From Phyllobates terribilis (Eukaryota): 64,000 nucleotides of DNA. A program made the translations under genes and the position numbers. Positions 23,524 through 64,000 of this stretch are shown here, one piece after another. Positions within the stretch are counted from its first letter, which is position 1. The number at the start of each line of letters is the position of its first letter. The stretch lies in NCBI RefSeq assembly GCF_046119375.1, contig NW_027362768.1, forward strand, positions 196,850,001 through 196,914,000, given 5' to 3'. The notes beneath the pieces were generated by a model. It was not told where the DNA came from, made no database searches, and was given only the letters and a program-made list of their open reading frames with translations.

Positions 23524-23929
23524 GACGTGGGCCGTCATGTGGCTGCAGAGAGACCCCCACATATGGACCATCCCCGAGGACGCATGAGCGGGGGGAAGGG
23601 CGCAGGGACCGGCGCCGCTGATCTCCGCTCCTTGGGAAGAGTTAATGTGTTTTGTGATCCTCCGAGGACTTGGTGATGCTGCACGGAAAGCGCCTCTATC
23701 TGTACAGAATCGCCCTGCCGGTCACCTGATCCCCAGTGGACGGCGGACACGATGAACATTTATCATAATGATCCTTCTAGATTTATAAAAGATTCCAGGG
23801 ACAAAAGTGAATTCAAGCCGGCGCCCCCGGGTGGTCGGAAAAAGGTGAATTATCAGAAATCTGGGAAATGAAATGGAAGTATATACAGTATGTATATGGG
23901 ACGAGGAAATGTGGCTCCCGTCGCCGCTA

Positions 23930-25260: not shown

Positions 25261-25349
25261 CTGCCTGTCTCCTGAGCGCGATCGCAGCGTTCAGGAGACA
25301 GGCAGACCCATTCTACGGAAAGCTGCTGAGACCATGCTCACAGCATCTA

Positions 25350-26412
25350 TATCCATAGACATTAATATGGAGAAAAGTATGTGCCCCCCACATCCACCTC
25401 CGGGGGCTTCTCTGTCCTCCATCTACATCCATAGACATTAATATGGAGATAAGTATGTGCCCCCCACATCCACCTCCGGGGACTTCTCTGTCCTCATCTA
25501 CATCCATAGACATTAATACAGAGAAAGTATGTGCCCCCCACATCCACCTCCAGGGGCTTCTCTGTCCTCATCTACATCCATAGACATTAATATGGAGAAA
25601 GTATGTGCCCCCCACATCCACCTCCGGGGGCTTCTCTGTCCTCATCTACATCCATAGACATTAATATGGAGGAAAGTATGTGCCCCCCACATCCACCTCC
25701 GGGGGCTTCTCTGTCCTCATCTACATCCATAGACATTAATATGGAGAAAGGTATGTGCCCCCCACATCCACCTCCAGGGGCTTCTCTGTCCTCATCTACA
25801 TCCATAGACATTAATATGGAGAAAAGTATGTGCCCCCCACATCCACCTCCGGGGGCTTCTCTGTCCTCATCTACATCCATAGACATTAATATGGAGAAAA
25901 GTATGTGCCCCCCACATCCACCTCCGGGGGCTTCTCTGTCCTCATCTACATCCATAGACATTAATATGGAGGAAAGTATGTGCCCCCCACATCCACCTCC
26001 GGGGGCTTCTCTGTCCTCATCTACATCCGTAGATATTAATATGGAGAAAAATATGTGCCCCCCACATCCACCTCCAGGGGCTTCTCTGTCCTCATCTACA
26101 TCCATAGACATTAATATGGAGGAAAGTATGTGCCCCCCGCATCCACCTCCAGGGGCTTCTCTGTCCTCCATCTATATCTATAGACATTAATATGGAGGAA
26201 AGTATGTGCCCCCCACATCCACCTCCGGGGGCTTCTCTGTCCTCCATCTATATCTATAGACATTAATATGGAGGAAAGTATGTGCCCCCCACATCCACCT
26301 CCAGGGGCTTCTCTGTCCTCATCTACATCCATAGACATTAATATGGAGAAAAGTATCTGCCCCCCACATCCACCTCCGGGGGCTTCTCTGTCCCTCATAG
26401 ACATTAATATGG
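25350..26412 (+). repeat. 75-bp minisatellite, ~14 copies, plus an orphan partial copy at ~24969-25013
   Basis: Unit atagacattaatatggagaaaagtatgtgccccccacatccacctccgggggcttctctgtcctcatctacatcc; 25-aa periodicity in the ORF track. Confidence 0.95.
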
Positions 26413-29699: not shown

Positions 29700-32040
29700 C
29701 TGGTACTGGGATGGGGGCACTATGGCCATTAATTCAGATGGGGGCACTGTGGCCATTAATTGAGATGAGGGCACTGTGGCCGGTAACAGAGAGATGGGGG
29801 CACTGTGGCCGGTAATAGAGATAGAGATGGGGGCACTGTGGCCGGTAATAGAGATAGAGATATGGGCACTGTGGCCGGTAACTGAGATGGGGGCACTGTG
29901 GCCGGTAACTGAGATGGGGGCACTGTGCCCGGTAACTGAGATGGGGGCACTGTGCCCGGTAACTGAGATGGGGGCGCTGTGGCCATTAATTGAGATGGGG
30001 GCGCTGTGGCCATTAATTGAGATGGGGGCGCTGTGGCCATTAATTGAGATGGGGGCACTGTGACCTGTAACCGAGATGGGGGCACTGTGGCCAGTAACTG
30101 AGATGGGGGCACTGTGGCCAGTAACTGAGATGGGGGCACTGTGGATAGTAACTGAGATGGGGGCACTGTGGCCAGTAACTGAGATGGGGGCACTGTGGCT
30201 AGTAGCTGACATGGGGGCACTGTGGCCAGTAACTGAGATGGGGGCACTGTGGCCATTAATTGAGATGGGAGCACTGTGGCTAGTAACTGACATGGGGGCA
30301 CTGTGGCCGGTAACTGACATGGGGGCACTGTGGCCAGTAACTGACTTGGGGGCACTGTGGCCAGTAACTGAGATGGGGGCACTGTGGCCAGTAACTGAGA
30401 TGGGGGCACTGTGGCCAGTAACTGAGATGGGGGCACTGTGGCTAGTATCTTACATGGGGGCACTGTGGCCGGCGCTGTGATGGGGGCACTGTGGCCAGTA
30501 ACTGAGATGGGGGCACTCTGGCCAGTCACTGAGATGTGGGCACTGTGGCTAGTAACTGACATGGGGGCACTGTGGCCGGTAACTGAGATGGGGGCACTGT
30601 GGTCAGTAACTGAGATGGGGGCACTGTGGCTAGTATCTTACATGGGGGCACTGGGGCCGGCGCTGTGATGGGGGCACTGTGGCCAGTAACTGAGATGGGG
30701 GCACTGTGGCCATTAATTGAGATGGGGGCACTGTGGTCAGTAACTGAGATGGGGGCGCTGTGGCTATTAATTGAGATGGGGGCACTGTGGCCAGTAACTG
30801 AGATGGGGGCACTGTGGCCGGTAACTGAGATGGGGGCACTGTGGCCGGTAACTGAGATGGGGGCACTGTGGCCGGTAACAGAGATGGGGGCACTGTGGCT
30901 GGTAACAGAGATAGAGATGGGGGCACTGTGGCTGGTAACAGAGATGGGGGCACTGTGGCCAGTAACTGAGATGGGGGCACTGTGGTCGGTAACATAGATG
31001 GGGGCACTGTGGCCGGTAACAGAGATGGGGGCACTGTGGCCGGTAACAGAGATGAGGGCACTGTGGCCGGTAACAGAGATAGAGATGGGGGCACTGTGGC
31101 CGGTAACTGAGATGGGGGCACTGTGACCTGTAACTGAGATGGGGGCGCTATGGCCATTAATTGAGATGGGGGCACTGTGGCCAGTAACTGAGATGGGGGC
31201 ACTGTGGTCAGTAACTGAGATGGGGGCACTGTGGTCAGTAACTGAGATGGGGGCACTGTGGTCAGTAACTGAGATGGGGGCACTGTGGCCATTAATTGAG
31301 ATGGGGGCACTGTGGCCAGTAACTGAGATGGGGGCACTGTGGCCAGTAACTGAGATGGGGGCACTGTGGTCAGTAACTGAGATGGGGGCACTGTGGTCAG
31401 TAACTGAGATGGGGGCACTGTGGTCAGTAACTGAGATGGGGGCACTGTGGCCAGTAACTGAGATGGGGGCACTGTGGCCAGTAACTGAGATGGGGGCACT
31501 GTGGTCAGTAACTGAGATGGGGGCACTGTGGCCGGTAACTGACATGGGGGCACTTTGACCATTAATTCAGATGGGGGCACTATGGCCATTAATTGAGATG
31601 GGGGCACTGTGGCCAGTAACTGAGATGGGGGCAGTGGCCGGTAACTGACATGGGGGCACTGTGGCCAGTAACTGAGATGGGGGCACTGTGGCCAGTAACT
31701 GAGATGGGGGCACTGTGGCCATTAATTGAGATGGGGGCACTTTGACCATTAATTGAGATGGGGGCACTGTGGCCATTAATTGAGATGGGGGCACTTTGAC
31801 CATTAATTGAGATGGGGGCACTATGGCCATTAATTGAGATGGGGGCACTGTGGCCAGTAACTGAGATGGGGGCACTGTGGCCGGTAACTGACATGGGGGC
31901 ACTGTGGCCGGTAACTGAGATGGGGGCACTGTGGCCAGTAACTGAGATGGGGGCACTGTGGCCGGTAACTGAGATGGGGGCACTGTGACTAGTATCTTAC
32001 ATGGGGGCACTGGGGCCGGTGCTGTGATGGGGGCACTGTA
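29700..32040 (+). repeat. 27-bp minisatellite (GAGATGGGGGCACTGTGGCCAGTAACT), ~85 copies, between the convergent samd13 and uox 3' ends
   Basis: 9-aa periodicity (MGALWPVTE / ATVPPSQLL) in the ORF track; direct tandem units. Confidence 0.96.
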
Positions 32041-32440: not shown

Positions 32441-35400
32441 CTGCGGAAACATTGGATATTCATTATTATTCTGGTATCATCATATAATACCGCCATAGTG
32501 TACAATCATATGAAGCCGCCATCAATCGTCACACTCTGCCATTATATGTTGGGGTGATCCCCCGCAGCTGCGTCCTGTGACACGGCCGGTAGACGCCGCG
32601 GCAGACGGCACCGCTTCTCATTACCTCGTCTTTGTTGCTCAGGTTGAACTTGCTCAGGTCGATGGTGAAATAATGTTTGTTTGGCAAAATAACTTCAACT
32701 TCTTCAATCTGCAATGAATAGAAATGATCATAGGGGCGAGGGTCCACGAGTCGCACTTTATGTTCTCATTTCCAAGCAGAATAATGTCCAATGTAAGAAG
32801 GATTCTCGAAAACTGACACCTGCTCCCCGATCACCGAGTCACCGAGACAAGTAACGGAGGACGAGAAGCCCCAGAGGAAGCCGAGATGGCCGCACCGGCT
32901 CCAACAAGACAGAAGTGGCCAAAAACCTCAGACAGAAAGAGCACTCGGCTAACAGCTGTCCCCGGCGTACACTAAGGTCTCCGTCCACAACCCTGTGACC
33001 CCCAAAACCAGACCCCTCTGACCCCTACAGAAAAGAAGAGGAAAAGAGATGGATAAAGAACAAATGAGGAAGAGATGAGTCAGTGCAGAAGCAGATGGTG
33101 AGAAATGAGCTGAGTGATCGTCCTACGGTCCGGCACTCCCGACCCATGATCCCGCACTCCCTGTCCCACGGCCCCGCACTCCCCAACTCCACACTCCCCG
33201 TCCCACAGCCCCGCACTGCCCGTCCCGCACTCTCCATCCTATAGTTTCACCAACACCGCCCTTCATTGCCTGTCCTATAGTCACCATCCTATAGTCACTG
33301 CTCTATAGTCCTGCAGTTCCTATCCCATAACCCCCCAGTTCCCGTCCTATAATCCCACTGTTCCTATCCCATAGCCCTGCAGTCATCATCCTATAGTCTC
33401 ACCAACACCATCCTGCAGTGCCTGTCCTATAGTCCTGTAATCACCATCCTATAGTCACTGCTCTATAATTCTCCAGCACCGTCCTACAGTCCCCGTCCTA
33501 TATTCCTGTAGTCACCGTCCTATAGTCACTGCTCTATAATTCTGCAGCACCATCCTACAGTCCCCGTCCTATATTCCTGTAGTCACCGTCCTATAGTCAC
33601 TGCTCTATAATTCTGCAGCACCGTCCTACAGTCCCCGTCCTATATTCCTGTAGTCACCATCCTATAGTCACTGCTCTATAATTCTGCAGCACCGTCCTAC
33701 AGTCCCCGTCCTATATTCCTGTAGTCACCGTCCTATAGTCACTGCTCTATAATTCTGCAGCACCGTCCTACAGTCCCCGTCCTATATTCCTGTAGTCACC
33801 GTCCTATAGTCACTGCTCTATAATTCTGCAGCACCGTCCTACAGTCCCCGTCCTATATTCCTGTAGTCACCGTCCTATAGTCACTGCTCTATAATTCTGC
33901 AGCACCGTCCTACAGTCCCCGTCCTATATTCCTGTAGTCACCATCCTGCAGTCACTGCTCTATAGTCCCGTTGTTCCTATCCCATAGCCCCGCAGTCCCC
34001 GTCCTATAGTCACTGTGCTATTGTCCTGCAGTTGCCGTCAGTCAATTGTGGGTGGTAAATCCTCGGAGTATAAGCCCTCTGAAGACCCCATAACTTTGTA
34101 TTAGACAAGAAGAAGAAATGAATCGATGCCAAATTGTGAACCTATTGGATAAGACCATGTAGTTGGCGGAGGCGGCGCACCTCTTTGATAGTGCACTGGA
34201 ACGCCTTTGCTGACGACATTTCTGACCATTGCACATAAGGAGCCCCCGGCCGCCGTGTGCCCCCCACTCTGTACCTCGGGGATGCGGCTCAGGCATAGCA
34301 CCTGGATGTCGTACAGCGTCTTCTGGACAGAGGGGGAATATTCTCCTTTGTCGTACGGACCAGCAAATTTGTCAAGGATTATTTCTTTCACGGTTCCCCT
34401 GGAGAAACAAGAAGATACTCGTCAGATGATCGTTATCTGGGGTCAGATTGATCAGTGTGTATATGATCATTAGAGCAGGGACTACTGAGAACATATGTCC
34501 ATGGAGCGCACCGGGAGTGCGGAGACCAGCCGAGCGCAATGCCGTGCTGTCCCCGGAGGCCCCAACAAGGAAAGGAGCGGCAGAGCGCACAATCGCCCAC
34601 CGCTCCCATTCACACAGAGCTCTTCCGAGCCCTAGTCCTTGGGATCGGTGGGAGTCCCAGCAGTCGTACCCAAAGTTATCGGGAAGCTATCCAATGGTTG
34701 AGGTAGAACTTCCAAACTTCAGAATGCCCTTTTAACTCACTGGCGATGGCCAGCGGCCGCTACCGTGGTCTGTGGTGTAACATGGTGGCCGTTCGATAAG
34801 AGTGGACCTCTGTTCTGGCTCATGGACCACCCTCTTTGATGAGAAAACCCCCGGGCTGTGCCAGTCTCACCGGACACAAGGCCACTTACCAGATGGCATC
34901 AGAGTTCAGCCCCTTGTAGGAGCTGTACTTCCATTTGCAGTTGACGATGGTGGAGAAGCAGCGGTCTTTCACCTCGGGGAGCGTTGTATATTGATCTTTT
35001 ATAAAACCTTCGAATCCGGACTGTGTCGTCTTCAGGACCCTCAGATCTATAATTCCAGAGTAAACGACGGGCTGAGCTGCGGAGAGGACACCAAAAAGAC
35101 GGCATAAGATGAAGGTGCGGACCCTACAACACCCGGTGGTCTCAGGCCTGTCACAACAAGGACTACCAGACTCGTTCCAGTTCTCCTACCTCCTCGCTCC
35201 TGTTCTACTTCACAGAAATGGACGCCCTCAGAGGAATAGATAAAGGCATGAACGTGCTCCACTCCGTCCTGAAGCCAAGAGAAACAGAGACACGAAGAAA
35301 TGCATCGTATTCCCGTATATAAGCCGGTGCAAAACACTGGGAACATTTCTCTTTCTGGCAGAGTTTCCAAACTTGTGCAGAACCTTATCATGTATCTCTG

Positions 35401-38400
35401 TATACAGGGAGCTCCCCCTAGTGGTGGCTGCAGACAGAATCTTATCCTGTATCTCTGTATACAGGGAGCTCCCCCTAGTGGTGGCTGCAGACAGGATCTT
35501 ATCATGTATCTCTGTATACAGGGAGCTCCCCCTAGTGGTGGCTGCAGACAGGATCTTATCATGTATCTCTGTATACAGGGAGCTCCCCCTAGTGGTGGCT
35601 GCAGACAGGATCTTATCATGTATCTCTGTATACAGGGAGCTCCCCCTAGTGGTGGCTACAGACAGAATCTTATCATGTATCTCTGTATACAGGGAGCTCC
35701 CCCTAGTGGTGGCTGCAGACAGGATCTTATCATGTATCTCTGTATACAGGGAGCTCCCCCTAGTGGTGGCTGCAGACAGGATCTTATCATGTATCTCTGT
35801 ATACAGGGAGCTCCCCCTAGTGGTGGCTGCAGACAGGATCTTATCATGTATCTCTGTATACAGGGAGCTCCCCCTAGTGGTGGCTGCAGACAGAATCTTA
35901 TCATGTATCTCTGTATACAGGGAGCTCCCCCTAGTGATGGCTAAAGACAGAATCTTATCATGTATCTCTGTATACAGGGAGCTCCCCCTAGAGGTGGCTA
36001 CAGACAGAATCTTATCATGTATCTCTGTATACAGGGAGCTCCCCCTAGTGGTGGCTGCAGACACGATCTTATCATGTATCTCTGTATACAGGGAGCTCCC
36101 CCTAGTGGTGGCTGCAGACAGGATATTATCATGTATCTCTGTATACAGGGAGCTCCCCCTAGTGGTGGCTGCAGACAGAATCTAATCATGTATATCTGTA
36201 TACAGGGAGCTCCCCCTAGTGGTGGCTGCAGACAGAATCTTATCATGTATCTCTGTATACAGGGAGCTCCCCCTAGTGGTGGCTGCAGACAGGATCTTAT
36301 GTATCTCTGTATACAGAGAGCTCCCCCTAGTGGTGCCTGCAGACAGGAACTTATCATATATCTCTGTATACAGGGAGCTCCCCCTAGTGGTGCCTGCAGA
36401 CAGGAACTTATCATGTATCTCTGTATACAGGGAGCTCCCCCTAGTGGTGGCTGCAGACAGGATCTTATCATGTATTTCTGTATACAGGGAGCTCCCCCTA
36501 GTGGTGACTGCAGACAGAATCTTATCATGTATCTCTGTATACAGAGAGCTCCTCCTAGTGGTGGCTGCAGACAGAACCGTATCATGTATCTCTGTATACA
36601 GGGAGCTCCCCCTAGTGGTGGCTGCAGACAGGATCTTATCATGTATCTCTGTATACAGGGAGCTCCCCCTAGTGGTGGCTGCAGACAGGATCTTATCATG
36701 TATCTCTGTATACAGGGAGCTCCCCCTAGTGGTGGCTGCAGACAGGATCTTATCATGTATCTCTGTACACAGGGAGCTCCCCCTAGTGGTGACTGCAGAC
36801 AGAATCTTATCATGTATCTCTGTATACAGGGAGCTCCCCCTAGTGGTGGCTGCAGACAGGATCTTATCATGTATCTCTGTACACAGGGAGCTCCCCCTAG
36901 TGGTAGCTGCAGACAGGATGTTATCATGTATCTCTGTATACAGGGAGCTCCCCCTAGTGGTGGCTGCAGACAGAATCTTATCATGTATCTCTGTATAAAG
37001 GGAGCTCCCCCTAGTGGTGGCTGCAGACAGAATCTTATCATGTATCTCTGTATACAGGGAGCTCCCCCTAGTGGCGACTGCAGACAGATCTTATCATGTA
37101 TCTCTGTATACAGGGAACTCCCCCTAGTGGTGGCTGCAGACAGGATCTTATCATGTATCTCTGTATACAGGGAGCTCCCCCTAATGGTGGCTGCAGACAG
37201 AATCTTATCATGTATCTCTGTATACAGGGAGCTCCCCCTAATGGTGGCTGCAGACAGAATCTTATCATGTATCTCTGTATACAGGGAGCTCCCCCTAGTG
37301 GTTACTGCAGACAGATCTTATCATGTATCTCTGTATACAGGGAGCTCCCCCTAGTGGTGGCTGCAGACAGAATCTTATCATGTATCTGTGTATACAGGGA
37401 GCTCCCCCTAGTGGAGGCTGCAGACAGGATCTTATCATGTATCTCTGTATACAGAGAGCTCCCCCTAATGGTGGCTGCAGACAGGATCTTATCATGTATC
37501 TCTGTATACAGGGAGCTCCCCCTAGTGGTGACTGCAGACAGAATCTTATCATGTATCTCTGTATACAGGGAACTCCCCCTAGTGGTGGCTGCAGACAGGA
37601 TCTTATCATGTATCTCTGTATACAGGGAGCTCCCCCTAATGGTGGCTGCAGACAGAATCTTATCATGTATCTCTGTATACAGGGAGCTCCCCCTAATGGT
37701 GGCTGCAGACAGAATCTTATCATGTATCTCTGTATACAGGGAGCTCCCCCTAGTGGTGACTGCAGACAGATCTTATCATGTATCTCTGTATACAGGGAAC
37801 TCCCCCTACTGGTGGCTGCAGACAGGATCTTATCATGTATCTCTGTATACAGGGAGCTTCCCCTAGTGGTGACTGCAGACAGAATCTTATCATGTATCTC
37901 TGTATACAGGGAACTCCCCCTAGTGGTGGCTGCAGACAGGATCTTATCATGTATCTGTGTATACAGGGAGCTCCCCCTAGTGGAGGCTGCAGACAGGATC
38001 TTATCATGTATCTCTGTATACAGGGAGCTCCCTCTAGTGGTGGCTGCAGACAGAATCTTATCATGTATCTGTGTATACAGGGAGCTCCCCCTAGTGGAGG
38101 CTGCAGACAGGATCTTATCATGTATCTCTGTATACAGAGAGCTCCCCCTAATGGTGGCTGCAGACAGGATCTTATCATGTATCTCTGTATACAGGGAGCT
38201 CCCCCTAGTGGTGACTGCAGACAGAATCTTATCATGTATCTCTGTATACAGGGAACTCCCCCTAGTGGTGGCTGCAGACAGAATCTTATCATGTATCTCT
38301 GTATACAGGGAGCTCCCCCTAGTGGTGGCTACAGACAGAATCTTATCATGTATCTCTGTATACAGGGAGCTCCCCCTAGTGGTGGCTACAGACAGAATCT

Positions 38401-41400
38401 TATCATGTATCTCTGTATACAGGGAGCTACCCCTAGTGGTGGCTGCAGACAGAACCTTATCATGTATCTCTGTATACAGGGAGCTACCCCTAGTGGTGGC
38501 TGCAGACAGGATCTTATCATGTATCTCTGTATACAGGGAGCTCCCCCTAGTGGTGGCTGCAGACAGGATCTTATCATGTATCTCTGTATACAGGGAGCTA
38601 CCCCTAGTGGTGGCTGCAGACAGTATCATATCATGTATCTCTGTATACAGGGAGCTCCCCCTAGTGGTGGCTGCAGACAGGATCTTATCATGTATCTCTG
38701 TATACAGGGAGCTCCCCCTAGTGGTGGCTGCAGACAGACCCTTATCATGTATCTCTGTATACAGGGAGCTCCCCCTAGTGGTGGCTGCAGACAGAATCTT
38801 ATCATGTATCTCTGTAAACAGGGAGCTCCCCCTAGTGGTGACTGCAGACAGAATCTTATCATGTATCTCTGTATACAGGGAGCTCCCCCTAGTGGTGACT
38901 GCAGACAGAATCTTATCATGTATCTCTGTATACAGGGAGCTCCCCCTAGTGGTGGCTGCAGACAGAATCTTATCATGTATCTCTGTATACAGGGAGCTCC
39001 CCCTAGTGGTGGCTGCAGACAGGATCTTATGTATCTCTGTATACAGAGAGCTCCCCCTATTGGTGACTGCAGACAGAATCTTATCATGTATCTCTGTATA
39101 CAGGGAGCTCCCCTAGTGGTGCCTGCAGACAGGATCTTATCATGTATCTCTGTATACAGGGAGCTCCCCCTAGTGGTGGCTGCAGACAGGATCTTATCAT
39201 GTATTTCTGTATACAGGGAGCTCCCCCTAGTGGTGACTGCAGACAGAATCTTATCATGTATCTCTGTATACAGAGAGCTCCTCCTAGTGGTAGCTGCAGA
39301 CAGGATCTTATCATGTATCTCTGTATACAGGGAGCTCCCCCTAGTGGTGGCTGCAGACAGAACCGTATCATGTATCTCTGTATACAGGGAGCTCCCCCTA
39401 GTGGTGGCTGCAGACAGGATCTTATCATGTATCTCTGTATACAGGGAGCTCCCCCTAGTGGTGGCTGCAGAGAGGATCTTATCATGTATCTCTGTACACA
39501 GGGAGCTCCCCCTAGTGGTGGCTGCAGACAGGATCTTATCATGTATCTCTGTACACAGGGAGCTCCCCCTAGTGGTGACTGCAGACAGAATCTTATCATG
39601 TATCTCTGTATACAGGGAGCTCCCCCTAGTGGTAGCTGCAGACAGAACCTTATCATGTATCTCTGTATACAGGGAGCTCCCCCTAGTGGTGGCTGCAGAC
39701 AGGATCTTATCATGTATCTCTGTACACAGGGAGCTCCCCCTAGTGGTAGCTGCAGACAGGATGTTATCATGTATCTCTGTATACAGGGAGCTCCCCCTAG
39801 TGGTGGCTGCAGACAGAATCTTATCATGTATCTCTGTATACAGGGAGCTCCCCCTAGTGGTGGCTGCAGACAGAATCTTATCATGTATCTCTGTATACAG
39901 GGAGCTCCCCCTAGTGGTGACTGCAGACAGATCTTATCATGTATCTCTGTATACAGGGAACTCCCCCTAGTGGTGGCTGCAGACAGGATCTTATCATGTA
40001 TCTCTGTATACAGGGAGCTCCCCCTAATGGTGGCTGCAGACAGAATCTTATCATGTATCTCTGTATACAGGGAGCTCCCCCTAATGGTGGCTGCAGACAG
40101 AATCTTATCATGTATCTCTGTATACAGGGAGCTCCCCCTAGTGGTGACTGCAGACAGATCTTATCATGTATCTCTGTATACAGGGAACTCCCCCTAGTGG
40201 TGGCTGCAGACAGGATCTTATCATGTATCTCTGTATACAGGGAGCTTCCCCTAGTGGTGACTGCAGACAGAATCTTATCATGTATCTCTGTATACAGGGA
40301 ACTCCCCCTAGTGGTGGCTGCAGACAGGATCTTATCATGTATCTCTGTATACAGGGAGCTCCTCCTAGTGGTGACTGCAGACAGATCTTATCATGTATCT
40401 CTGTATACAGGGAGCTCCCCCTAGTGGTGGCTGCAGACAGAATCTTATCATGTATCTGTGTATACAGGGAGCTCCCCCTAGTGGAGGCTGCAGACAGGAT
40501 CTTATCATGTATCTCTCTATACAGAGAGCTCCCCCTAATGGTGGCTGCAGACAGGATCTTATCATGTATCTCTGTATACAGGGAGCTCCCCCTAGTGGTG
40601 ACTGCAGACAGAATCTTATCATGTATCTCTGTATACAGGGAACTCCCCCTAGTGGTGGCTGCAGACAGAATCTTATCATGTATCTCTGTATACAGGGAGC
40701 TCCCCCTAGTGGTGGCTACAGACAGAATCTTATCATGTATCTCTGTATACAGGGAGCTCCCCCTAGTGGTGGCTACAGACAGAATCTTATCATGTATCTC
40801 TGTATACAGGGAGCTACCCCTAGTGGTGGCTGCAGACAGAACCTTATCATGTATCTCTGTATACAGGGAGCTACCCCTAGTGGTGGCTGCAGACAGGATC
40901 TTATCATGTAATCTCTGTATACCGGGAGCTCCCCCTAGTGGAGGCTGCAGACAGGTTCTTATCATGTATCTCTGTATACAGGGAGCTCCCCCTAGTGGTG
41001 GCTGCAGACAGGATCTTATCATGTATCTCTGTATACAGGGAGCTACCCCTAGTGGTGGCTGCAGACAGTATCATATCATGTATCTCTGTATACAGGGAGC
41101 TCCCCCTAGTGGTGGCTGCAGACAGGATCTTATCATGTATCTCTGTATACAGGGAGCTCCCCCTAGTGGTGGCTGCAGACAAACCCTTATCATGTATCTC
41201 TGTATACAGGGAGCTCCCCCTAGTGGTGGCTGCAGACAGAATCTTATCATGTATCTCTGTATACAGGGAGCTCCCCCTAGTGCTGGCTGCAGACAGAATC
41301 TTATCATGTATCTCTGTATACAAGGAGCTCCCCCTAGTGGTGGCTGCAGACAGGATCTTATCATGTATCTCTGTATACAGGGAGCTTCCCCTAGTGGTGG

Positions 41401-44400
41401 CTGCAGACAGACCCTTATCATGTATCTCTGTATACAGGGAGCTCCCCCTAGTGGTGGCTGCAGACAGAATCTTATCATGTATCTCTGTATACAGGGAGCT
41501 CCCCCTAGTGCTGGCTGCAGACAGAACCTTATCATGTATCTCTGTATACAGGAAGCTCCCCCTAGTGGTGGCTGCAGACAGGATCTTATCATGTATCTCT
41601 GTATACAGCGAGCTCCCCCTAGTGGTGGCTGCAGACAGGATCTTATCATGTATCTCTGTATACAGGGAGCTCCCCCTAGTGCTGGCTGCAGACAGAACCT
41701 TATCATGTATCTCTGTATACAGGAAGCTCCCCCTAGTGGTGGCTGCAGACAGGATCTTATCATGTATCTCTGTATATAGGAAGCTCCCCCTAGTGGTGGC
41801 TGCAGACAGGATCTTATCATGTATCTCTGTATACAGGGAGCTCCCCCTAGTGGTGACTGCAGACAGGATCTTATCATGTATCTCTGTATACAGGGAGCTC
41901 CCCCTAGTGGTGGCTACAGACAGAATCTTATCATGTATCTCTGTATACAGGGAGCTACCCCTAGTGGTGGCTGCAGACAGAACCTTATCATGTATCTCTG
42001 TATACAGGGAGCTACCCCTAGTGGTGGCTGCAGACAGGATCTTATCATGTATCTCTGTATACCGGGAGCTCCCCCTAGTGGAGGCTGCAGACAGGATCTT
42101 ATCATGTATCTCTGTATACAGGGAGCTCCCCCTAGTGGTGGCTGCAGACAAGATCTTATCATGTATCTCTGTATACAGGGAGCTACCCCTAGTGGTGGCT
42201 GCAGACAGGATCTTATCATGTATCTCTGTATACCGGGAGCTCACCCTAGTGGAGGCTGCAGACAGGATCTTATCATGTATCTCTGTATACAGGGAGCTCC
42301 CCCTAGTGGTGGCTGCAGACATGATCTTATCATGTATCTCTGTATACAGGGAGCTCCCCCTAGTGGTGGCTGCAGACATGATCTTATCATGTATCTCTGT
42401 ATACAGGGAGCTCCCCCTAGTGGTGGCTGCAGACAGGATCTTATCATGTATCTCTGTATACAGGGAGCTCCCCCTAGTGGTGGCTGCAGACATGATCTTA
42501 TGTATCTCTGTATACAGGGAGCTCCCCCTAGTGGTGGCTGCAGACATGATCTTATCATGTATCTCTGTATACAGGGAGCTCCCCCTAGTGGTGGCTGCAG
42601 ACAGAACCTTATCATGTATCTCTGTATACAGGGAGCTCCCCCTAGTGGTGGCTGCAGACAGGATCTTATCATGTATCTCTGTATACAGGGAGCTCCCCCT
42701 AGTGGTGACTGCAGACAGGATCTTATCATGTATCTCTGTATACAGGGAGCCCCCCCTAGTGGTGGCTGCAGACAGAATCTTATCATGTATCTCTGTATAC
42801 AGGGAGCTCCCCCTAGTGGTGGCTACAGACAGAATCTTATCATGTATCTCTGTATATAGGGAGCTCCCCCTAGTGGTGGCTACAGACAGAATCTTATCAT
42901 GTATCTCTGTATACAGGGAGCTCCCCCTAGTGGTGGCTACAGACAGAATCTTATCATGTATCTCTGTATACAGAGAGCTCCCCCTAGTGGTGGCTACAGA
43001 CAGAATCTTATCATGCATCTCTGTATACAGGGAGCTCCCCCTAGTGGTGGCTGCAGACAGGATATTATCATGTATCTCTGTATACAGGGAGCTCCCCCTA
43101 GTGGTGGCTGCAGACAGAATCTAATCATGTATATCTGTATACAGGGAGCTCCACCTAGTGGTGGCTGCAGACAGAATCTTATCATGTATCTCTGTATACA
43201 GGGAGCTCCCCCTAGTGGTGGCTGCAGACAGGATCTTATGTATCTCTGTATACAGGGAGCTCCCCCTAATGGTGACTGCAGACAGAATCTTATCATGTAT
43301 CTCTGTATACAGGGAGCTCCCCCTAGTGGTGCCTGCAGACAGGATCTTATCATGTATCTCTGTATACAGGGAGCTCCCCCTAGTGGTGGCTGCAGACAGG
43401 ATCTTATCATGTATCTCTGTATACAGGGAGCTCCCCCTAGTGGTGGTTGCAGACAGAATCTTATCATGTATCTCTGTATACAGGGAGCTCCCCCTAGTGG
43501 TGACTGCAGACAGAATCTTATCATGTATCTCTGTATACAGAGAGCTCCTCCTAGTGGTAGCTGCAGACAGGATCTTATCATGTATCTCTGTATACAGGGA
43601 GCTCCCCCTAGTGGTGGCTGCAGACAGAACCGTATCATGTATCTCTGTATAGAGGGAGCGCCCCCTAGTGGTGGCTGCAGACAGGATCTTATCATGTATC
43701 TCTGTATACAGGGAGCTCCCCCTAGTGGTGGCTGCAGACAGGATCTTATCATGTATCTCTGTACACAGGGAGCTCCCCCTAGTGGTGACTGCAGACAGAA
43801 TCTTATCATGTATCTCTGTATACAGGGAGCTCCCCCTAGTGGTAGCTGCAGACAGAACCTTATCATGTATCTCTGTATACAGGGAGCTCCCCCTAGTGGT
43901 GGCTGCAGACAGGATCTTATCATGTATCTCTGTACACAGGGAGCTCCCCCTAGTGGTAGCTGCAGACAGGATGTTATCATGTATCTCTGTATACAGGGAG
44001 CTCCCCCTATTGGTAGCTGCAGACAGGATGTTATCATGTATCCCTGTATACAGGGAGCTCCCCCTAGTGGTGACTGCAGACAGAATCTTATCATGTATCT
44101 CTGTACACAGGGAGCTCCTCCTAGTGGTGGCTGCAGACAGGATCTTATCATGTATCTGTGTATACAGGGAGCTCCCCCTAGTGGTGGCTGCAGACAGAAT
44201 CTTATCATGTATCTCTGTATACAGAGAGCTCCCCCTACTGGTGGCTGCAGACAGGATCTTATCATGTATCTCTGTATACAGGGAGCTCCCCCTAGTGGTG
44301 GCTGCAGACAGAATCTTATCATGTATCTCTGTATACAGGGAGCTCCCCCTAGTGGTGGCTGCAGACAGAATCTTATCATGTATCTCTGTATACAGGGAGC

Positions 44401-47400
44401 TCCCCCTAGTGCTGGCTGCAGACAGGATCTTATCATGTATCTCTGTATACAGGGAGCTCCCCCTAGTGGTGGCTGCAGACATGATCTTATCATGTATCTC
44501 TGTATACAGGGAGCTCCCCCTAGTGGTGGCTGCAGACAGGATCTTATCATGTATCTCTGTATACAGGGAGCTCCTCCTAGTGGTGGCTGCAGACAGGATC
44601 TTATCATGTATTTCTGTATACAGGGAGCTCCCCCTAGTGGTGGCTGCAGACAGGATCTTATCATGTATCTCTGTATACAGGGAGCTCTTATCATGTATCT
44701 CTGTATACAGGGAGCTCCTCCTAGTGGTGGCTGCAGACAGGATCTTATCATGTATCTCTGTATACAGGGAGCTCCCCCTAGTGGTGGCTGCAGACAGAAT
44801 CTTATTATGTATCTCTGTATACAGGGAGATCCTCCTAGTGGTGGCTGCAGACAGGATCTTATCATGTATATCTGTATACAGGGAGCTCCCCCTAGTGGTG
44901 ACTGCAGACAGAATCTTATCATGTATCTCTGTATACAGGGAACTCCCCCTAGTGGTGGCTGCAGACAGGATCTTATCATGTATCTCTGTATACAGGGAGC
45001 TCCCCCTAATGGTGGCTGCAGACAGAATCTTATCATGTATCTCTGTATACAGGGAGCTCCCCCTAATGGTGGCTGCAGACAGAATCTTATCATGTATATC
45101 TGTATACAGGGAGCTCCCCCTAGTGGCAATTGTTCTTCATTTTGATATTTTTGTATTGTATTAAAATTAAAAAATAAAGCCTTTGATAAAGTATCTACAA
45201 CTACCTTTTTAAAGCGTTTCCAGGGGGCTTCTTCGATGTAGATCTTTGCTTTTGTCACGTGGCTGAAGGATGTGAGGAAATGATTACAAATCTCCAGAGA
45301 GAAATCCTCGATGGTGTTTATCTGTGCAATAAAATTAGATATAAAGTCATTGTTGAGGATGACGGCCGGGAGACGATATAATCTGTCCGTCAAGAGTGAC
45401 AGAAATGTAATAAAATGGGACCCGAGTGTTAATGATCCTCGTGTGGTGAGAGTTACAGGTGCGGAATGTACTGGCTGCCACCAGAGAGCACTAGCTTACA
45501 CATTCAATAAACACAAATATGAATAATTCTCACCCCTTTGGTCTTGGCCAGGGCGTAGACGGTATTTTTGATGGTATCGGTGGGGATGATGTCGCTGTTG
45601 TCCCCCTCCAGGTAATCTTTCTTGGAGCTCAGGGTGAGCTGCACCGAGGCCTCGATCTCCCGGACGGAGTGCTTCTCGCCATCTCTCCTGATCTGCAGAA
45701 CTTTCACAGCGTTCTTCCCATAACCCGTCCGGACAAACTCCACGTCCTGGAAAAACAGAAATCACGGAAAATAAAAAGCAAAGTTTTCTGTCAGTGATGA
45801 GAAGCTGAAGCTGCACCTTGTGGGGTCGCCCCGCCAGATGTACGGACGTCGCAGAGCAGAGACCCCCTTATAAGCGGGAGGCGGCCGGATCTCATTTACA
45901 TTTCTTCACTTTCTCGCTTTTCTCCCTTATAATTTGCAGTTTTTATACGGAGGGTCTCGTAATACGCAGGGACGTCTGTATGGGGTATTTGGCTACGTCA
46001 GAGCTGTAAGTCGCTGTGCACATCCACAGAACTGTCTTCTTTTTATTCCCACGTCTCCCTGAGGCTTTATCTTCTTTCCTCTTAAATCCTCCAGACAGTT
46101 CCTGAGATCTGGGCCTTTTTATTTGGTGCTAATTTATATGGACTTAACCAAGAGGGTGTGGCACAGTGATAATTCTAAAAAGCTACCTTAAGACACACCC
46201 ACTTGGTAAAGACTAGAAAAAGGTAGCACTAAATAAAAAGCCCGATGTCTCAGGAACCGTACGAGGGGGTTCAAGAAAAGAACGAAAAACTCAGGGAAGC
46301 AGCGGGAATAAAATAAGAGCAAACGCTGGCACTTCTGATTTGGTGATGGCTCCTCTGTACGTGCAGTGTGAACGGAGCCTGAGAAGACGACATTGGTGAA
46401 GTCTGTGATCAGAGACCCGGGATATTCAGGAGAGGACATCATAGAGGCCACAGCAGCCAATCAGCAGCTCGTGTGATGTGATGCCGCCATCACGTGACCC
46501 AGTGTAATCCACACCAGGCCGCGGTGCAGGATCCGCTCTGCAGGAACGCTGCACCGAGAATATGGAAACTATTGTCCTGGTATCTCATGTAGGATCAGAC
46601 TGAAGTCATTGGGTTCATAATTCACTGTGGTGTAAAACAGCGGGAAAGACGAGCTGCAGACAGCGAGGATGTGTGCGCTGCCGCCCCTGAGGAGCAGCCA
46701 CCCCCTGAGCAGCCGCCCCCCTGAGGAGCAGCCGCCTCCCTGAGCAGCCGCCCCCCTGAGGAGCAGCCGCCTACCTGAGGAGCAGCCACCCCCCCTGAGA
46801 AGCTGCCGCCTGCCTGAGGAGCAGCCACCTCCCTGAGGAGCAACCGCCCCCCTGAGGAGCAACCGGCCCCCTGAGGAGCAGCCACCCTCTTGAGGAGCAA
46901 CCGTCTCCCTGAGGAGCATCTGCCCCCCCGAGGAGCAACCTCCCTCTTGAGGAGCAACCTCCCTCTTAAGGAGCAACCGCCCCACCTGACGAGCAGCCAC
47001 CACTTGAGGAGCAGCCACCGCCTGAGGACCAGCCGCTCCCCTGAGGAGCAGCCGTTCCCCTGAAGAGCAGCCGTTCCCCTGAGGAGCAGCCACCCTCTTG
47101 AGGAGAAACCGTCCCCCTGAGGAGCAACCGCCCCGCTGAGGAGCAGCCACCCTCTTGAGGAGCAACCGCCCCCTGAGGAGCAGCCGCCATTTTAAGGAGC
47201 AACCGCCCCCCTGAGGAGCAGCAACCGCCCCCCCTGAGTAGCCACCACCCCCCTAAGGAGCAGCCGCCTTGTCTCCATGTCATACAGTCTCAGTGCAGGA
47301 ACTTCACCAATCAGGAGGATACTACGCAGGTCTCCTGCGAGGTCCCGGAGCGCAGTGGTACCCGGAACGCTGCCCATGGGAGCCGTTGCCCTGACCGTAC

Positions 47401-51823: not shown

Positions 51824-54800
51824 GTAGGTAAACACTGATGAGATCCATAGGAATCACTGATTGATCGATTCACCCCTCAATAAGGCTGCGTTCACACTTT
51901 GTGGCGTCACCATTTCAATAACGCTGCAAAAACTTTGCAGTTCTATCGCAACTGCAATGTGTGAACGCAGCCTAAAGGTTAAGACCACAGACAGATGATG
52001 AGGAGCTGCAGCCCCTTCTGTCACCATGCGATGGAGGGCCGAGGTGCCAGTGCAGCACAGCTCTACTCAATGGAGGCATCTGCCGCCCTCCAAAATCTGG
52101 GACATAAGAGTGAAGGTGCCACAGGGCTGAAGTAACTGTGCCGCTGCTGTGGCCGGGGACCCTCTATTCTCTGTGGGGTCCCAGACCACCCACCACTCTT
52201 ATCAAAGTAATAGCAACAGAAAACCCTTTACCAGACCAGTTCCTGAATTCAGCGGATCTCACTATAGATCCCAGTACAATAATGACACTGGTCCTGTAGC
52301 GATCCGAAGTGTCGGCACTGAGAATCCAGGCTGGTAAATTAGCCCAGAAGTGCATTGGGGGTGTAAACAGAAGCAGTACAGACACGCCCCCAATGCACTT
52401 CCAGACTAATTTGCTTGTTTTTTCATTACTTGATTTCTCAGCACTGGTACATCGGATCACGAGACCGGGATCAGGTTTATTGTACTGGGACCTGTGTATC
52501 TGTCCTGCTAGTGTCAGTAGGGAAACCCTCCGACTGTGCCCTGTATACAGCACCTGGAGCAGGTCGGTCCTATATGTGCCAGCGGCCAAGTTATAGGGGT
52601 CTGGACCATCGCCTACATGCTCTGGATGGCCACTTCATGTGGCCGTATTATGGCAGCACTCGTGTCCCGGTCATCAGAGCTCAGCCTCCAACATATGTAA
52701 TAAAAGCATCCGCCACCGGACCTCACTCTACTGGCTGCAGCCCCCCAGCGCCCTATGGGGGAATAGGAGGCCGGACCCTCTATTTTGCAGCAGATACTTA
52801 AGGATTTAACCCATTGTGATCTTTCTACATACAGTGCAGAGAAGTCCTTTTTTTTGCACAGATTTTAATTAGAAAATGTACAAAAATATGTATAAAAAAA
52901 AAAAAAAAAGGCCCCTCAGGCAAGAGTCCGGGTGGATGATGATGATGGGGGTCCTTGCACATAGACTCTGGGGGGACGATGAAGGAGAAGAGTCCGGGGG
53001 GACGATGGCTGAGGTCCCTGCACACAGTACAGTCCGGGAAGACGATGGCTGGGGTCCTCGCACACAGTAGAGACCGGGCGGGGGGGGGGGGGGGGACGGA
53101 CGGACGATGGCAGGGGTCCTCGCCCACAGGAGAGTCCGGGGGGGAACGATGGCAGGGGTCCTCGCCCACAGGAGAGTCCGGTGGGGTTCCGCCTGTCAGG
53201 TGGCGGAGGCCCGGAGGATCTTGACCTCGTCCCGCGGCCGGTCCTGGCTGTCCGTCTCCACCATCCCCAGCCTGTTCAGGGTCCCCAGGCCCTGGCTCAC
53301 CCGCCCGAAGATCGTGTGCTTGCCGTCCAGCCACTGGGCCGGGGCCAGGGTGAGGAAGAACTGGCTGCCGTTGGTGTCGGGCCCGGAGTTGGCCATGGCG
53401 AGGATCCCGGCCCCGGTGAACTTCAGCTCCGGGTGCAGCTCGTCGGGGAAGTGCTTCCCGTCATAGATGGAGCCTCCGCCGCGCCCGGTGCCCGTGGGGT
53501 CCCCGCCCTGTACCATGAAGTCTTTGATGATGCGGTGGAACTTGGTGCCGTTGTAGTAGCCGCGGCGGGAGAGCTCGGCGAAGTTCCTGCACGTCCGCGG
53601 GGCGTGCTCCCAGTACAGCTCCACCGTGATCGTGCCCATGCTGGTGTCCAGGCTGACGGTGGACGGCCGCCAATTGTCCGGTGGGATCCCCGCCATCCTA
53701 CACGCGTGTGACCGGGGAGCGCCGCCGCGAGAACACACTTCCGCTTTCCAAGCCTCGTTCTCAGACGCACAGCTTCCGGTGTCAATAAAGTTACTTTTGA
53801 ATACTGTAGTAACTCAGTGGCCATTGCTCATGGCAACCAATCAGAACGCTTTTTACATTTTCAACTTTTCTGAATGAATATAAACTGGAATCTGATTGGT
53901 TGTTGTGGGCAGAGCTGAAGCTACATCTTACAGCTGAGTCTCAGGAATTAAATCTCAATTTCCACAATCCGTCACTAATAAAGATAAACACAATCTCAAA
54001 TACAGGGGAAGATTTACAAGACTGCCTGAAAGACAATGTTTAAGTAATGCCAGAAGTAGCCAATCACAGAGCAGGTTTTATTTTTCAATAGCAGAATATG
54101 AAATGAAAGCTGCGCTGTGATTGGCTGCCGTGGCGTACAACAGTAATTCCAGGATCTGAGGGGTTTATGCAAAGTGGAAGTTGGGGAAACTCGTGTCAAA
54201 AAGTGTCGTCAGGCCCCAAGTAATAAAACACAGCACGCCATTTGTAAACAGTGAGGTGTTAGTGGTTCATAGTTAGAATGCATTGCATTTAGGGGGTCTG
54301 TATCAGTTTCAGAGGTCCAGTCTGGGGTCTTTATTCATTTAGAAGGTTTGGTCTTGGGTCTGTATCAGTTTTGGGGGTCCAGTCTGGGGTCTGTATCAGT
54401 TTTGGGGGTCTGGTCTGGGGTCTGTATTAGAAGGTCCGCTCTGGGGCCTGTATCAGTTTTGGGGGGGTGGGTCCAGTCTGGAGTCTGTATCAGTTTTGGG
54501 GGTCCGGCCTGGGGTCTGTATTAGTTTTGGGGGTCTGGTGTCTGTATTAGAAGGTCCTCTCTGGAGTCTGTATTAGAAGGTCCGCTCTGGGGTCTGTATC
54601 AGTTCGGGGGGGAGGGGGGGGGGTCTGGTCTGGGGTCTGTATCAGTTTGGGGGGACTGGTCTTGGGCCTGTATAAGTTCGGGGGTTCAGTCTGGGGTCTG
54701 GATCAGTTTTGGAGGTCCGGTCTGGGGTCTGTATCAATTTTGGGGGTCTGGTCTGCAGGCTGTATTAGAAGATCCGCTCTGGAGTCTGTATCAGCTCGGG

Positions 54801-60832: not shown

Positions 60833-61128
60833 TATATGCTGGCAGCCTTCGGTCACCACTAGAGGGAGCACAGGAGCTTCCTGCATACAGGTCATTATTG
60901 AGCTCAGTGTATGGTCTGTATACAGCACTGCCCCCCGAGCTCCCCCTAGTGTTCATTAAAGGGATTTATGTAGCAATTAAAAACTGGACTTTCTCTTCAG
61001 TTTATACGCAGAAGCTATTGTCCGGTAGGATGGACTTGTCGAAAAAGAAGAAGGAATCAAAATTGCTGGATGAATCATGAACAATCCTAAATACGCAGAC
61101 GATACAACATTGATAGCAACAAGCGCAG

Positions 61129-63279: not shown

Positions 63280-64000
63280 TTATTATCAAGATAAGAGCGG
63301 AGAAGACCCTGGTGACCTCTCTAGGCTGCACAAGATCCATCTTCCTACAGAGCGTTCATCCATCACGTCATGGCTCAAGATCGGGCAGAAGGCCATTAAT
63401 AATAATATTGTTATCCTTTCACATACTCAGGTGCCTCTACTGCAGCTCCATGCTTTGCTGATTGAGTGAACACTCGTCCTGTGACAAACCTTCCTTCCTC
63501 ACTTCCAGGGTGGTTTGAGCTCTTCGAATGCCGATTTCAGATATTCACGGCCACCGCCCCGTATTTGCATTTAATCGCCTCGCTCTTTCTGCCTGCTGCA
63601 CGTAGTTTGCATTATTACATTTTTTGCATAGTTGGTGACTATTTCAGCTATTAGCGGATCAAACCCTGAAGTCAGTTATTCTATAAATCTCTATATGCAG
63701 CTACTTTACAATGTGCAAAATATTATATTTTTGCAATTGTTTTTATTTCCTCATTGGCCAGTGACCAGACAATGGTCTTTTAAGCTTATTTTGCTTATAT
63801 GGACATTATTTTTCTTTTTTTATATGCACAATTTTTCCAGCAATGCATTTAATGTTTGGAGAGTTGAGGGGATTTTTTTTTTATATATATATAATAAAAT
63901 TAATACTAATTAATTATCCTCTTGTATTTATTGATGTGCTTATTACTTCTGGATTGTCTGTGTCCTTCCCCCCCACCCTATTGTTCATTAAAGGGATTTA

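What the first reader, a model, noticed from the sequence alone, without database searches (positions are those of the whole stretch)
35378..45126. ~170 co-oriented, CpG-free CTCF-like motifs form a 9.7 kb array inside the uricase gene: candidate tandem insulator
On the minus strand every 57-bp unit reads CCACCACTAGGGGGAGCTC. This matches the vertebrate CTCF core (CCACYAGGGGGCGC) at all but one position, an A where C is usually strongly preferred. The consensus unit has no CpG, so methylation could not switch binding off. All copies point the same way, towards samd13. CTCF-bound macrosatellites such as DXZ4 are known boundary elements. A dense CTCF-like minisatellite sitting between a liver enzyme's promoter and its 3' exons is not something I recognise as described. 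Function is inference.
Basis: partly seen in the sequence, partly recalled or inferred. Interest (0 to 1): 0.72.

Follow-up and report, generated by a model that had tools for sequence, protein, structure and literature searches.

The report
Transposon-derived CTCF-motif minisatellite in frog uricase intron
The 9.7-kb repeat in the golden poison frog's uricase gene is real and each unit has a strong CTCF-like motif, but it is a recent local expansion of a very abundant 57-bp satellite copied from the end of a frog transposon, so an insulator role is possible but unsupported.

Summary
Observation confirmed. 171 head-to-tail 57-bp units lie at 35384-45126 and fill 98% of uricase (uox) intron 3. 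168 units carry a CTCF-like core of at least 12 bits, all on the minus (gene-sense) strand. The array has almost no CpG.

The insulator reading is not supported by context.
- The unit is one arm of an inverted-repeat, MITE-like element. Bufo and Engystomops carry single copies in the same intron, and other copies lie at other loci. The motif is therefore transposon-borne.
- The array is lineage-specific: 171 units here, 12.5 in Dendrobates tinctorius, at least 3 in Ranitomeya imitator.
- Units differ about 2.5% from their consensus, while the flanking intron differs 16-26% between the two genera. The expansion is recent.
- Motif columns are no better conserved than the others.
- In a DNA run of another individual, thousands of different contigs carry the unit, at roughly 100,000 times the single-copy depth. 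The family is genome-wide.
- RNA contigs show intron 3 spliced out correctly and uox well expressed.

CTCF binding remains biochemically plausible: the same 13-base core in the human IL3 insulator binds CTCF. It is untested in this frog.

This scan had already noted an apparently identical 57-bp array elsewhere on this chromosome (s1-196877), and other CTCF-motif arrays in this genome.

The parts
35384..45126 (-). 57-bp minisatellite of 171 units. The CTCF-like core CCACTAGGGGGAGC lies on the minus (uox sense) strand of each unit.
   Evidence: TRF; segmentation and column counts; PWM scan; CpG count.
35269..45204 (-). uox intron 3, 9,936 bp, of which 98% is the array. The unique flanks are 78 bp (45127-45204) and 115 bp (35269-35383).
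   Evidence: Exon mapping. RNA contigs join exon 3 at 45204/45205 to the sequence of exon 4 (loose end at 45204).
45205..45321 (-). uox exon 3 (INTIEDF...PWKRFKK).
   Evidence: Identical to P0002, uricase-like of Phyllobates terribilis. RNA joint 45321 to 45534.
45534..45746 (-). uox exon 2 ([11 protein letters not shown]...AKTKG).
   Evidence: Pfam Uricase PF01014, E 8e-11.
35191..35268 (-). uox exon 4 (DGVEHVHAF...[10 protein letters not shown]).
   Evidence: The RNA loose end at 45204 matches this exon.
34889..35080 (-). uox exon 5, which holds the uricase signature [14 protein letters not shown].
   Evidence: PROSITE-type pattern hit; Pfam Uricase, E 6.5e-17.
60853..60955 (.). Dispersed relative of the unit: a small foldback element in a dnase2b intron. 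Both of its arms are collinear with the unit (CACCACTAGAGGGAGC...CTGCATACAG, and its inverse).
   Evidence: PWM hits at 60853(+) and 60937(-); blastn; sequence; alignment A1. An orthologue lies in D. tinctorius at L001 2180-2307, 81% identical.
63940..64000 (+). Diverged further copy of the sequence next to the foldback element, cut by the window end.
   Evidence: blastn, 25 bases at 96%; sequence.

Best explanation
The array is a lineage-specific expansion of a 57-bp satellite whose unit is one arm (terminal inverted repeat region) of a MITE-like DNA element of hyloid frogs.

Origin (inferred from the comparisons below): an element of this family sat in uox intron 3 before toads, tungara frogs and poison frogs diverged. 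In the poison-frog ancestor its gene-sense arm became tandemly duplicated. In the Phyllobates terribilis lineage, unequal exchange or replication slippage then inflated it from about a dozen units to 171, turning an intron of about 200 bp plus the element into one of 9.9 kb.

The CTCF-like core is the best-conserved block of the element's arm and came with it. I infer that it is conserved because it is the transposase-binding end, not because of CTCF.

The array is transcribed as part of the uox pre-mRNA and removed by normal splicing (shown). The same 57-mer is present at very high copy number elsewhere in the genome (shown, to order of magnitude).

The unit should be able to bind CTCF in vitro. 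This is inferred from the motif score and from a human site with an identical 13-base core. At this locus, however, the array is most likely a selectively neutral repeat with no dedicated insulator role.
For: 1. Homology to a transposon arm.
- In Bufo bufo, uox intron 3 holds an element of about 830 bp whose inverted ends both align with the unit (L003 about 6553-6600 and 7330-7378). A second such element lies at L003 11434-12431.
- Engystomops keeps one arm in its 256-bp intron 3.
- P. terribilis and D. tinctorius share a foldback copy in dnase2b.
- In alignment A1, 41 of the 57 unit bases align to these arms, and the block ACCACTAG.GGGAGC is invariant.

2. Orthology and copy number.
- D. tinctorius has the identical-consensus 57-mer in the same intron, with the same start point and an orthologous 3' flank. 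It has only 5.1 + 7.4 units, split by a 1.15-kb TE insertion.
- R. imitator has at least 3.2 units beside exon 4.
- E. coqui and Lithobates have none.

3. Youth. Units differ from their consensus by 1.1-1.7 substitutions per unit, and mean pairwise identity between units is about 96%. There is no higher-order period and no edge gradient. Intron sequence outside the array is only 74-88% identical between the two genera.

4. No motif-specific constraint. The substituted fraction is 3.3% in the 19 motif columns and 2.1% elsewhere.

5. Genome-wide family. In DNA run X5, from another individual, 9,735 different contigs lie on the three terminal units. Their summed word depth is 1.3-3.9 million against 9.79 on the unique flank, and they have many different flanking sequences. 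Note s1-196877 reports another 57-bp array 173 Mb away.

6. Repeat-rich setting. Half of the window is tandem arrays of 13 other families, none with a CTCF-like hit. The sister genus has 8.5-kb and 3.6-kb arrays of other units at this locus.

7. Normal gene function. RNA contigs in three runs join exons 2-3 and 3-4, with depth up to about 10,000. The NCBI protein model P0002 matches all exons.

8. Precedent. MITE-to-satellite conversion is established in frogs (Xstir, miDNA4; PMC12628747). Frog minisatellites derived from TE fragments are described in PMC10794172.
Against: - The motif match is very strong and its 13-base core is identical to a proven human insulator site, so CTCF occupancy cannot be dismissed.
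- The CTCF-like block is the most conserved part of the arm across copies and species (A1). That could also reflect selection after insertion.
- This scan has flagged about 19 CTCF-motif arrays in this genome, several at promoters. This hints at something more than drift, though these are unchecked notes and may reflect reader bias.
- Summed contig depth is not a true copy number (the tool's own warning).
- The transposon superfamily, target-site duplications and an autonomous partner were not identified.
- The PWM was recalled from memory.
Confidence: 0.72

Rival explanations
1. Functional multi-CTCF array. The 171 co-oriented sites are occupied by CTCF and stall cohesin arriving from the samd13 / uox 3' side. 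They would act as a strong one-sided boundary or enhancer blocker between the uox/dnase2b promoters and samd13, as tandem CTCF sites do in reporter assays.
For: - The consensus scores 18.8 of 26 bits, and 168 of 171 units score at least 12 bits, all on one strand.
- The core shares CCACTAGGGGGAG with the human IL3 +2.9 kb insulator site, which binds CTCF. Insulation there rises with tandem copies (PMC12885311).
- There is no CpG in the motif, so DNA methylation cannot directly block binding.
- Frog CTCF uses the vertebrate motif: it shows convergent orientation at X. tropicalis TAD borders (PMC8270788).
- A + strand CTCF-like site at 23271 would form a convergent pair with the array.
Against: - The motif has a transposon origin.
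- The genome holds on the order of 100,000 or more copies, far more than typical CTCF site numbers.
- Copy number is not conserved among close relatives.
- Motif columns are not protected.
- No clear upstream ZF9-11 motif is present: the best match is 4-5 of 10 bases at a 3-bp linker. That motif was essential for enhancer blocking by the IL3 site.
- Spacing of 57 bp leaves no room for the positioned nucleosomes that flank bound sites.
- uox is highly expressed through the array.
- In X. tropicalis liver, CTCF and TADs are weak (PMC8270788).
Confidence: 0.18
2. The array acts on uox RNA processing rather than on chromatin. Each gene-sense unit carries acceptor-like sequences (a pyrimidine run followed by CTGCAG, and ...TATACAG), so 171 decoy sites could slow or modulate splicing or elongation of uox.
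For: - The unit sequence on the sense strand contains these sequences.
- Intron length has grown about 50-fold relative to Engystomops.
- Unit-containing RNA contigs are abundant.
Against: - No joint from the exon 3 donor into any unit was reported. All three RNA runs show the exon 3 to exon 4 junction.
- The abundant unit RNA cannot be assigned to this locus, because the family is genome-wide.
- Contigs drop rare variants, so weak cryptic splicing is not excluded.
Confidence: 0.05
3. Assembly artefact. The array is real but its length of 171 units is inflated or collapsed by mis-assembly.
For: - Tandem arrays are error-prone in assemblies.
- The R. imitator contig degenerates into C-free junk exactly at this array.
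- Logan contigs cannot span the array.
Against: - At 9.7 kb the array is within the reach of long reads.
- The units carry irregular variant patterns with no block duplication.
- Both junctions with unique sequence are clean. The 45126 junction is confirmed by a 1,041-base contig from another individual.
- The annotated gene model spans the array.
Confidence: 0.05

Closest known systems
MITE-derived tandem repeats in frogs (Xstir; the miDNA4 satellite of Xenopus), reviewed in PMC12628747
   Same: The unit is homologous to part of an inverted-repeat element. Solo elements, short arrays and long arrays coexist. Expansions are lineage-specific. Arrays lose the element's other end.
   Different: It is a different element family, found in hyloid frogs. 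It was not detected at the Lithobates or E. coqui uox loci. Here the amplified part is the terminal arm itself, and it happens to be a near-consensus CTCF core. The superfamily is unassigned.
Transposon-borne CTCF site expansions (rodent SINE B2 and similar; from general knowledge)
   Same: A mobile element carries a high-scoring CTCF core and spreads it to very many loci in one lineage.
   Different: Here it is a DNA element rather than a SINE, and it is amplified further as tandem arrays. CTCF occupancy is proven for B2 but untested here.
CTCF-bound macrosatellites DXZ4 / FIRRE / D4Z4 (PMC3491370 for DXZ4)
   Same: It is a tandem array with one co-oriented CTCF motif per unit, and sequence and copy number turn over quickly between species.
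   Different: Those monomers are kilobases long, with one site per about 3 kb. Here there are 17.5 sites per kb. Those arrays are single-locus, bound by CTCF in a chromatin-state-dependent way, and anchor superloops. This family is genome-wide and nothing is known of its binding.
Human IL3/CSF2 +2.9 kb insulator CTCF site (PMC12885311)
   Same: The core shares the 13 bases CCACTAGGGGGAG, including the unusual A in place of C. Tandem copies increase insulation.
   Different: The IL3 site has a separate upstream motif about 8 bp from the core that is essential for insulation. The frog unit has only a CTGCAG abutting the core (3 bp away) and no convincing upstream match.
Subtelomeric TE-derived minisatellites of frogs (Bredeson et al. 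2024, PMC10794172)
   Same: Fragments of TEs expand into minisatellites in recombination-rich, repeat-dense regions, and the expansions differ between frog lineages.
   Different: Those described come from SINE/tRNA-V, CR1 and Kolobok in Xenopus. I do not know whether this window is subtelomeric.

Membership tests
Vertebrate CTCF binding site | High-scoring match to the 15-19 bp core motif (ZF3-7) | tested here: met
   The consensus unit scores 18.8 of 26.0 bits, p about 3e-7, and 168 of 171 units score at least 12 bits. The matrix was recalled from memory. Cross-checked against the printed core of the IL3 insulator site.
Vertebrate CTCF binding site | Occupancy by CTCF in vivo or in vitro | not testable with these tools
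   No ChIP or EMSA data exist for this species. All runs found are genomic or RNA contigs.
Insulator-class CTCF site | Upstream ZF9-11 motif, 2-7 bp from the core region (PMC12885311) | tested here: inconclusive
   By eye against the printed consensus and the IL3 site, the best match is 4-5 of 10 bases at a 3-bp linker. The CTGCAG lies 3 bp from the core rather than about 12. No matrix was available.
CTCF-bound macrosatellite boundary (DXZ4 type) | Kilobase-scale monomers, single locus | tested here: not met
   The unit is 57 bp. The family is genome-wide.
CTCF-bound macrosatellite boundary (DXZ4 type) | Array retained at the orthologous locus across related species | tested here: inconclusive
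   The seed array is retained in three poison-frog genera, but at 171, 12.5 and at least 3 units.
CTCF-bound macrosatellite boundary (DXZ4 type) | Contact-map boundary or superloop anchor | not testable with these tools
   No Hi-C analysis tool was available.
MITE/TE-derived satellite | Unit homologous and collinear with part of a dispersed inverted-repeat element | tested here: met
   Alignment A1 of the unit with seven arms from three species; blastn.
MITE/TE-derived satellite | Element present as inverted-arm copies at unrelated loci and in several species | tested here: met
   Bufo L003 has two elements, at 6553-7385 and 11434-12431. P. terribilis has 60853-60955 with its D. tinctorius orthologue. 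Engystomops has L004 12305-12350.
MITE/TE-derived satellite | The same unit forms arrays or copies at many loci | tested here: met
   9,735 distinct contigs and about 100,000 times single-copy summed depth, with many different flanks, in a DNA run. The depth is an order of magnitude only.
MITE/TE-derived satellite | Target-site duplication and assignable transposase superfamily | tested here: inconclusive
   No target-site duplication is recognisable at the Bufo element. No Repbase or Dfam library was available. The foldback folds only weakly better than shuffles, z = -1.87.

The most novel reading that the evidence does not exclude
A DNA-transposon family of hyloid frogs carries a near-consensus, CpG-free CTCF core in its terminal arms. 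It has seeded on the order of 100,000 such motifs in poison-frog genomes, both singly and as minisatellites. A substantial share would be occupied by CTCF. On this reading, arrays like the one in uox intron 3 act as dense one-sided cohesin barriers, and array length differences between species (171 against 12 units) rewire local insulation. That would be an amphibian counterpart of the rodent B2 wave, but array-forming.
Probability: 0.15. Interest if true: 0.7.

Novelty: new member of a known kind. Interest (0 to 1): 0.33.

Why it matters
For this locus the result is mainly corrective. A striking '171 CTCF sites inside a gene' pattern turns out to be an ordinary repeat expansion, and that should temper the many similar CTCF-array notes in this genome.

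The wider point may be worth one experiment. Poison frogs carry a very abundant, methylation-proof, high-scoring CTCF motif on a transposon arm. The sister genera offer a natural long-versus-short allele comparison at the same intron. If CTCF binds these units, they would be a large sink or source of boundary elements in a 6-9 Gb class genome (size from general knowledge). If it does not, they are a good case for learning what keeps perfect motifs unoccupied.

I found no description of this 57-bp family or its parent element in the literature I could search.

Tried and rejected
- Fuzzy-regex segmentation of the array timed out. Ungapped greedy segmentation lost register near 44657. Both were replaced by local alignment.
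- A search of the scan's notes by sequence was blank.
- P0002, the window's own uricase, is not on record in the contig index.
- An exact-string literature search for the core found only the human IL3 site and unrelated primers.
- No paper on frog CTCF-motif repeats or poison-frog satellites was found.
- The R. imitator locus upstream of the array is unusable: poly-A followed by C-free sequence. Its true copy number is therefore unknown.
- The E. coqui and Lithobates uox loci show no trace of the element.
- A higher-order repeat structure was looked for and not found.
- Motif-specific conservation was looked for and not found.
- I considered whether the orthologous Bufo and Engystomops arms show extra conservation of the motif. 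The whole arm and its flank are about 80% alike, so there is no motif-specific signal (by eye).
- The spliced uricase protein was not joined or searched.
- All runs found are Logan contigs, so true depth, copy number and rare splice forms could not be read.


Full report
**1. Observation**

TRF reports a period-57 array at 35384-45126 with 94% matches. Local-alignment segmentation gives 171 units. Of these, 131 are exactly 57 bp and 19 are 54 bp. The minus strand of the consensus contains CCACCACTAGGGGGAGCTC.

The exact 19-mer occurs in 76 units and the exact 14-base core in 114. Neither occurs on the + strand or outside the array. I scored the array with the JASPAR MA0139.1 matrix as I recall it, so the scores are approximate.
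- The consensus scores 18.8 of a possible 26.0 bits, p about 3e-7 per position.
- 168 of 171 units score at least 12 bits and 121 score at least 16, all on the minus strand.

The array has 10 CpG in 9,743 bp, observed/expected 0.017, against 0.575 in the rest of the window. Two corrections apply: 'every unit' is an overstatement, and the units are copies of one another, so this is one motif amplified, not 171 independent matches.

**2. Gene context**

Uricase exons lie on the minus strand (Pfam PF01014; uricase signature). The NCBI protein 'uricase-like isoform X2 [Phyllobates terribilis]' (P0002) matches every exon exactly. The window is therefore from the golden poison frog.
- Exon 3 is 45205-45321 and exon 4 is 35191-35268.
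- Intron 3 is 35269-45204 (9,936 bp), of which the array is 98%.
- Only 78 bp and 115 bp of unique sequence remain at the two ends.
- A SAM-domain exon (samd13) lies near 23 kb on the + strand, so the motifs do point towards samd13.

RNA-type contigs from three runs join exon 2 to exon 3 (joint 45321 to 45534, GT..AG on the gene strand). They continue from exon 3 into the sequence of exon 4. Depth reaches about 10,000 in one run. The intron and its array are spliced out correctly, and uox is well expressed.

**3. Orthologous introns**

I searched with a stop-free ORF that contains exon 4 and retrieved frog uricases, then fetched their loci.

| Species | Locus | Intron 3 | 57-mer or parent element |
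|---|---|---|---|
| P. terribilis | window | 9,936 bp | 171 units |
| D. tinctorius | L001 | 2,065 bp | 5.1 + 7.4 units |
| R. imitator | L002 | unknown | at least 3.2 units |
| Bufo bufo | L003 | 1,135 bp | one element of about 830 bp |
| Engystomops | L004 | 256 bp | one arm |
| E. coqui | L005 | 1,318 bp | none |
| Lithobates | L007 | 6,815 bp | none |

- In D. tinctorius the 57-mer has an identical consensus. It starts at the same point after exon 3 and is followed by an orthologous 3' flank. The two blocks are split by a 1.15-kb TE that inserted inside one motif.
- In R. imitator the units lie beside exon 4. Upstream of them the contig is an assembly artefact, so the true count is unknown.
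- E. coqui and Lithobates show no trace of the unit.

**4. Origin of the unit**

In Bufo, intron 3 holds an element of about 830 bp whose two ends are inverted copies of a sequence that aligns with the unit. A second such element lies 5 kb away. Engystomops keeps one arm in its short intron.

In the window itself, a small foldback element in a dnase2b intron (60853-60955) has both arms collinear with the unit. It has an orthologue in D. tinctorius.

Alignment A1 shows that about 41 of the 57 unit bases align to these arms. The block ACCACTAG.GGGAGC is invariant. The unit is therefore one arm of a MITE-like element, and the CTCF-like core is the most conserved part of that arm.

I could not find target-site duplications or assign a superfamily. 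The foldback folds only slightly better than shuffled sequence, z = -1.87.

**5. Age and constraint**

- Units differ from their consensus by 1.1-1.7 substitutions per unit, about 2.5%.
- There is no higher-order period and no edge gradient.
- Unique intron sequence around the array is only 74-88% identical between P. terribilis and D. tinctorius.

Most of the 171 units therefore arose or were homogenised well after the genera split.

The substituted fraction is 3.3% in the 19 motif columns and 2.1% elsewhere, or 1.1% elsewhere if the one dimorphic column is left out. The motif is not specially protected within the array.

**6. Genome-wide abundance**

I laid contigs of a DNA run from another individual (X5) on 44950-46100.
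- One 1,041-base contig covers the unique flank at depth 9.79 and enters the first unit.
- 9,735 different contigs lie on the three terminal units. Their summed depth is 1.3-3.9 million, and they have many different flanking sequences.

The tool warns that summed contig depth is not a copy number, so I take it only as an order of magnitude: 100,000 copies or more. RNA runs also hold hundreds of unit-bearing contigs.

About 19 notes flag CTCF-motif arrays in this genome. These notes are unchecked leads, but they agree with the read evidence.

**7. Setting**

Half of the window (31,967 bp) is tandem arrays of 13 other families. None has a CTCF-like hit of 12 bits or more. D. tinctorius has 8.5-kb and 3.6-kb arrays of unrelated units at the orthologous locus. 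Large minisatellite expansions at this locus therefore do not depend on a CTCF motif.

**8. Could it bind CTCF?**

Probably, in vitro.
- The human IL3 +2.9 kb insulator site has the core CCACTAGGGGGAGACA, with the same A. It binds CTCF in gel shifts and blocks an enhancer (PMC12885311).
- Frog CTCF follows the vertebrate motif rules (PMC8270788).

Several points count against an insulator role.
- The IL3 paper shows that enhancer blocking needs the upstream ZF9-11 motif. The frog unit has no convincing match to it: 4-5 of 10 bases at best, judged by eye.
- Spacing of 57 bp is very unlike any known CTCF-bound array.
- The gene is transcribed through the array at a high level.
- The family's copy number far exceeds normal CTCF site numbers.

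**9. Verdict**

The best explanation is a neutral, recent, lineage-specific expansion of a transposon-arm satellite (confidence about 0.72). A CTCF-occupied boundary array remains possible (about 0.18). Effects on RNA processing and an assembly-length error are each minor possibilities.

The closest known systems are the MITE-derived satellites of Xenopus (Xstir, miDNA4; PMC12628747) and the TE-derived frog minisatellites of PMC10794172. Transposon-borne CTCF waves and DXZ4-type macrosatellites are functional analogies only.

I file this as a new member of a known kind. Interest is modest for this locus. It is somewhat higher for the genome-wide question of whether a CTCF-motif-bearing transposon arm is bound in poison frogs.

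Noticed in passing
window:1-32039, 33314-33967, 46684-47268, 54351-54685, 61129-61369 and 62451-62798: Half of the window (31,967 bp, counting the 57-mer array itself) is tandem arrays. Thirteen other, unrelated families are present, including a 14-mer x697 (1-9771), a 34-mer (13911-17189), a 27-mer x86 (29705-32039) and a 75-mer x14 (25344-26398). None has a CTCF-like hit.
   Followed up: partly
L001:18446-26943 and L001:7154-10743: The D. tinctorius uox/dnase2b locus carries its own giant arrays that are not expanded in P. terribilis: a 30-mer of about 280 copies and a 31-mer of 116 copies. Each species has inflated different minisatellites at the same locus.
   Followed up: partly
L002:1-6630: The R. 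imitator contig is poly-A and then about 3.7 kb of cytosine-free sequence up to the first 57-bp unit. This is an assembly artefact that starts exactly at the array.
   Followed up: no
L001:28076-29230: A 1.15-kb TE fragment sits inside one unit of the D. tinctorius array and interrupts the CTCF-like core itself.
   Followed up: no
window:42997-45495 (minus strand) and other stretches of the array: The unit is 19 codons long, and the gene-sense strand is open for up to 833 codons (repeat [19 protein letters not shown]). It is intronic and spliced out, so it is probably meaningless.
   Followed up: no
window:23271-23289 (+) and 23819-23837 (-): Two single-copy, CpG-containing CTCF-like hits (16.0 and 17.7 bits) flank a SAM-domain (samd13) exon. 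The + strand site would be convergent with the minus-strand array.
   Followed up: no
window:44950-45126, in RNA runs X10, X13 and X7: Hundreds of unit-bearing contigs with very high summed depth appear in runs that also show spliced uox. The 57-mer family is therefore well represented in RNA, from unknown loci.
   Followed up: no
window:61060-61120: A LINE reverse-transcriptase fragment (...YADDTTLIA...) lies next to the foldback element.
   Followed up: no
L001:11181-11681: The intronless cyclophilin-type gene (Pro_isomerase) nested in dnase2b is also present in D. tinctorius, in line with the earlier PPIL1 retrogene note.
   Followed up: no
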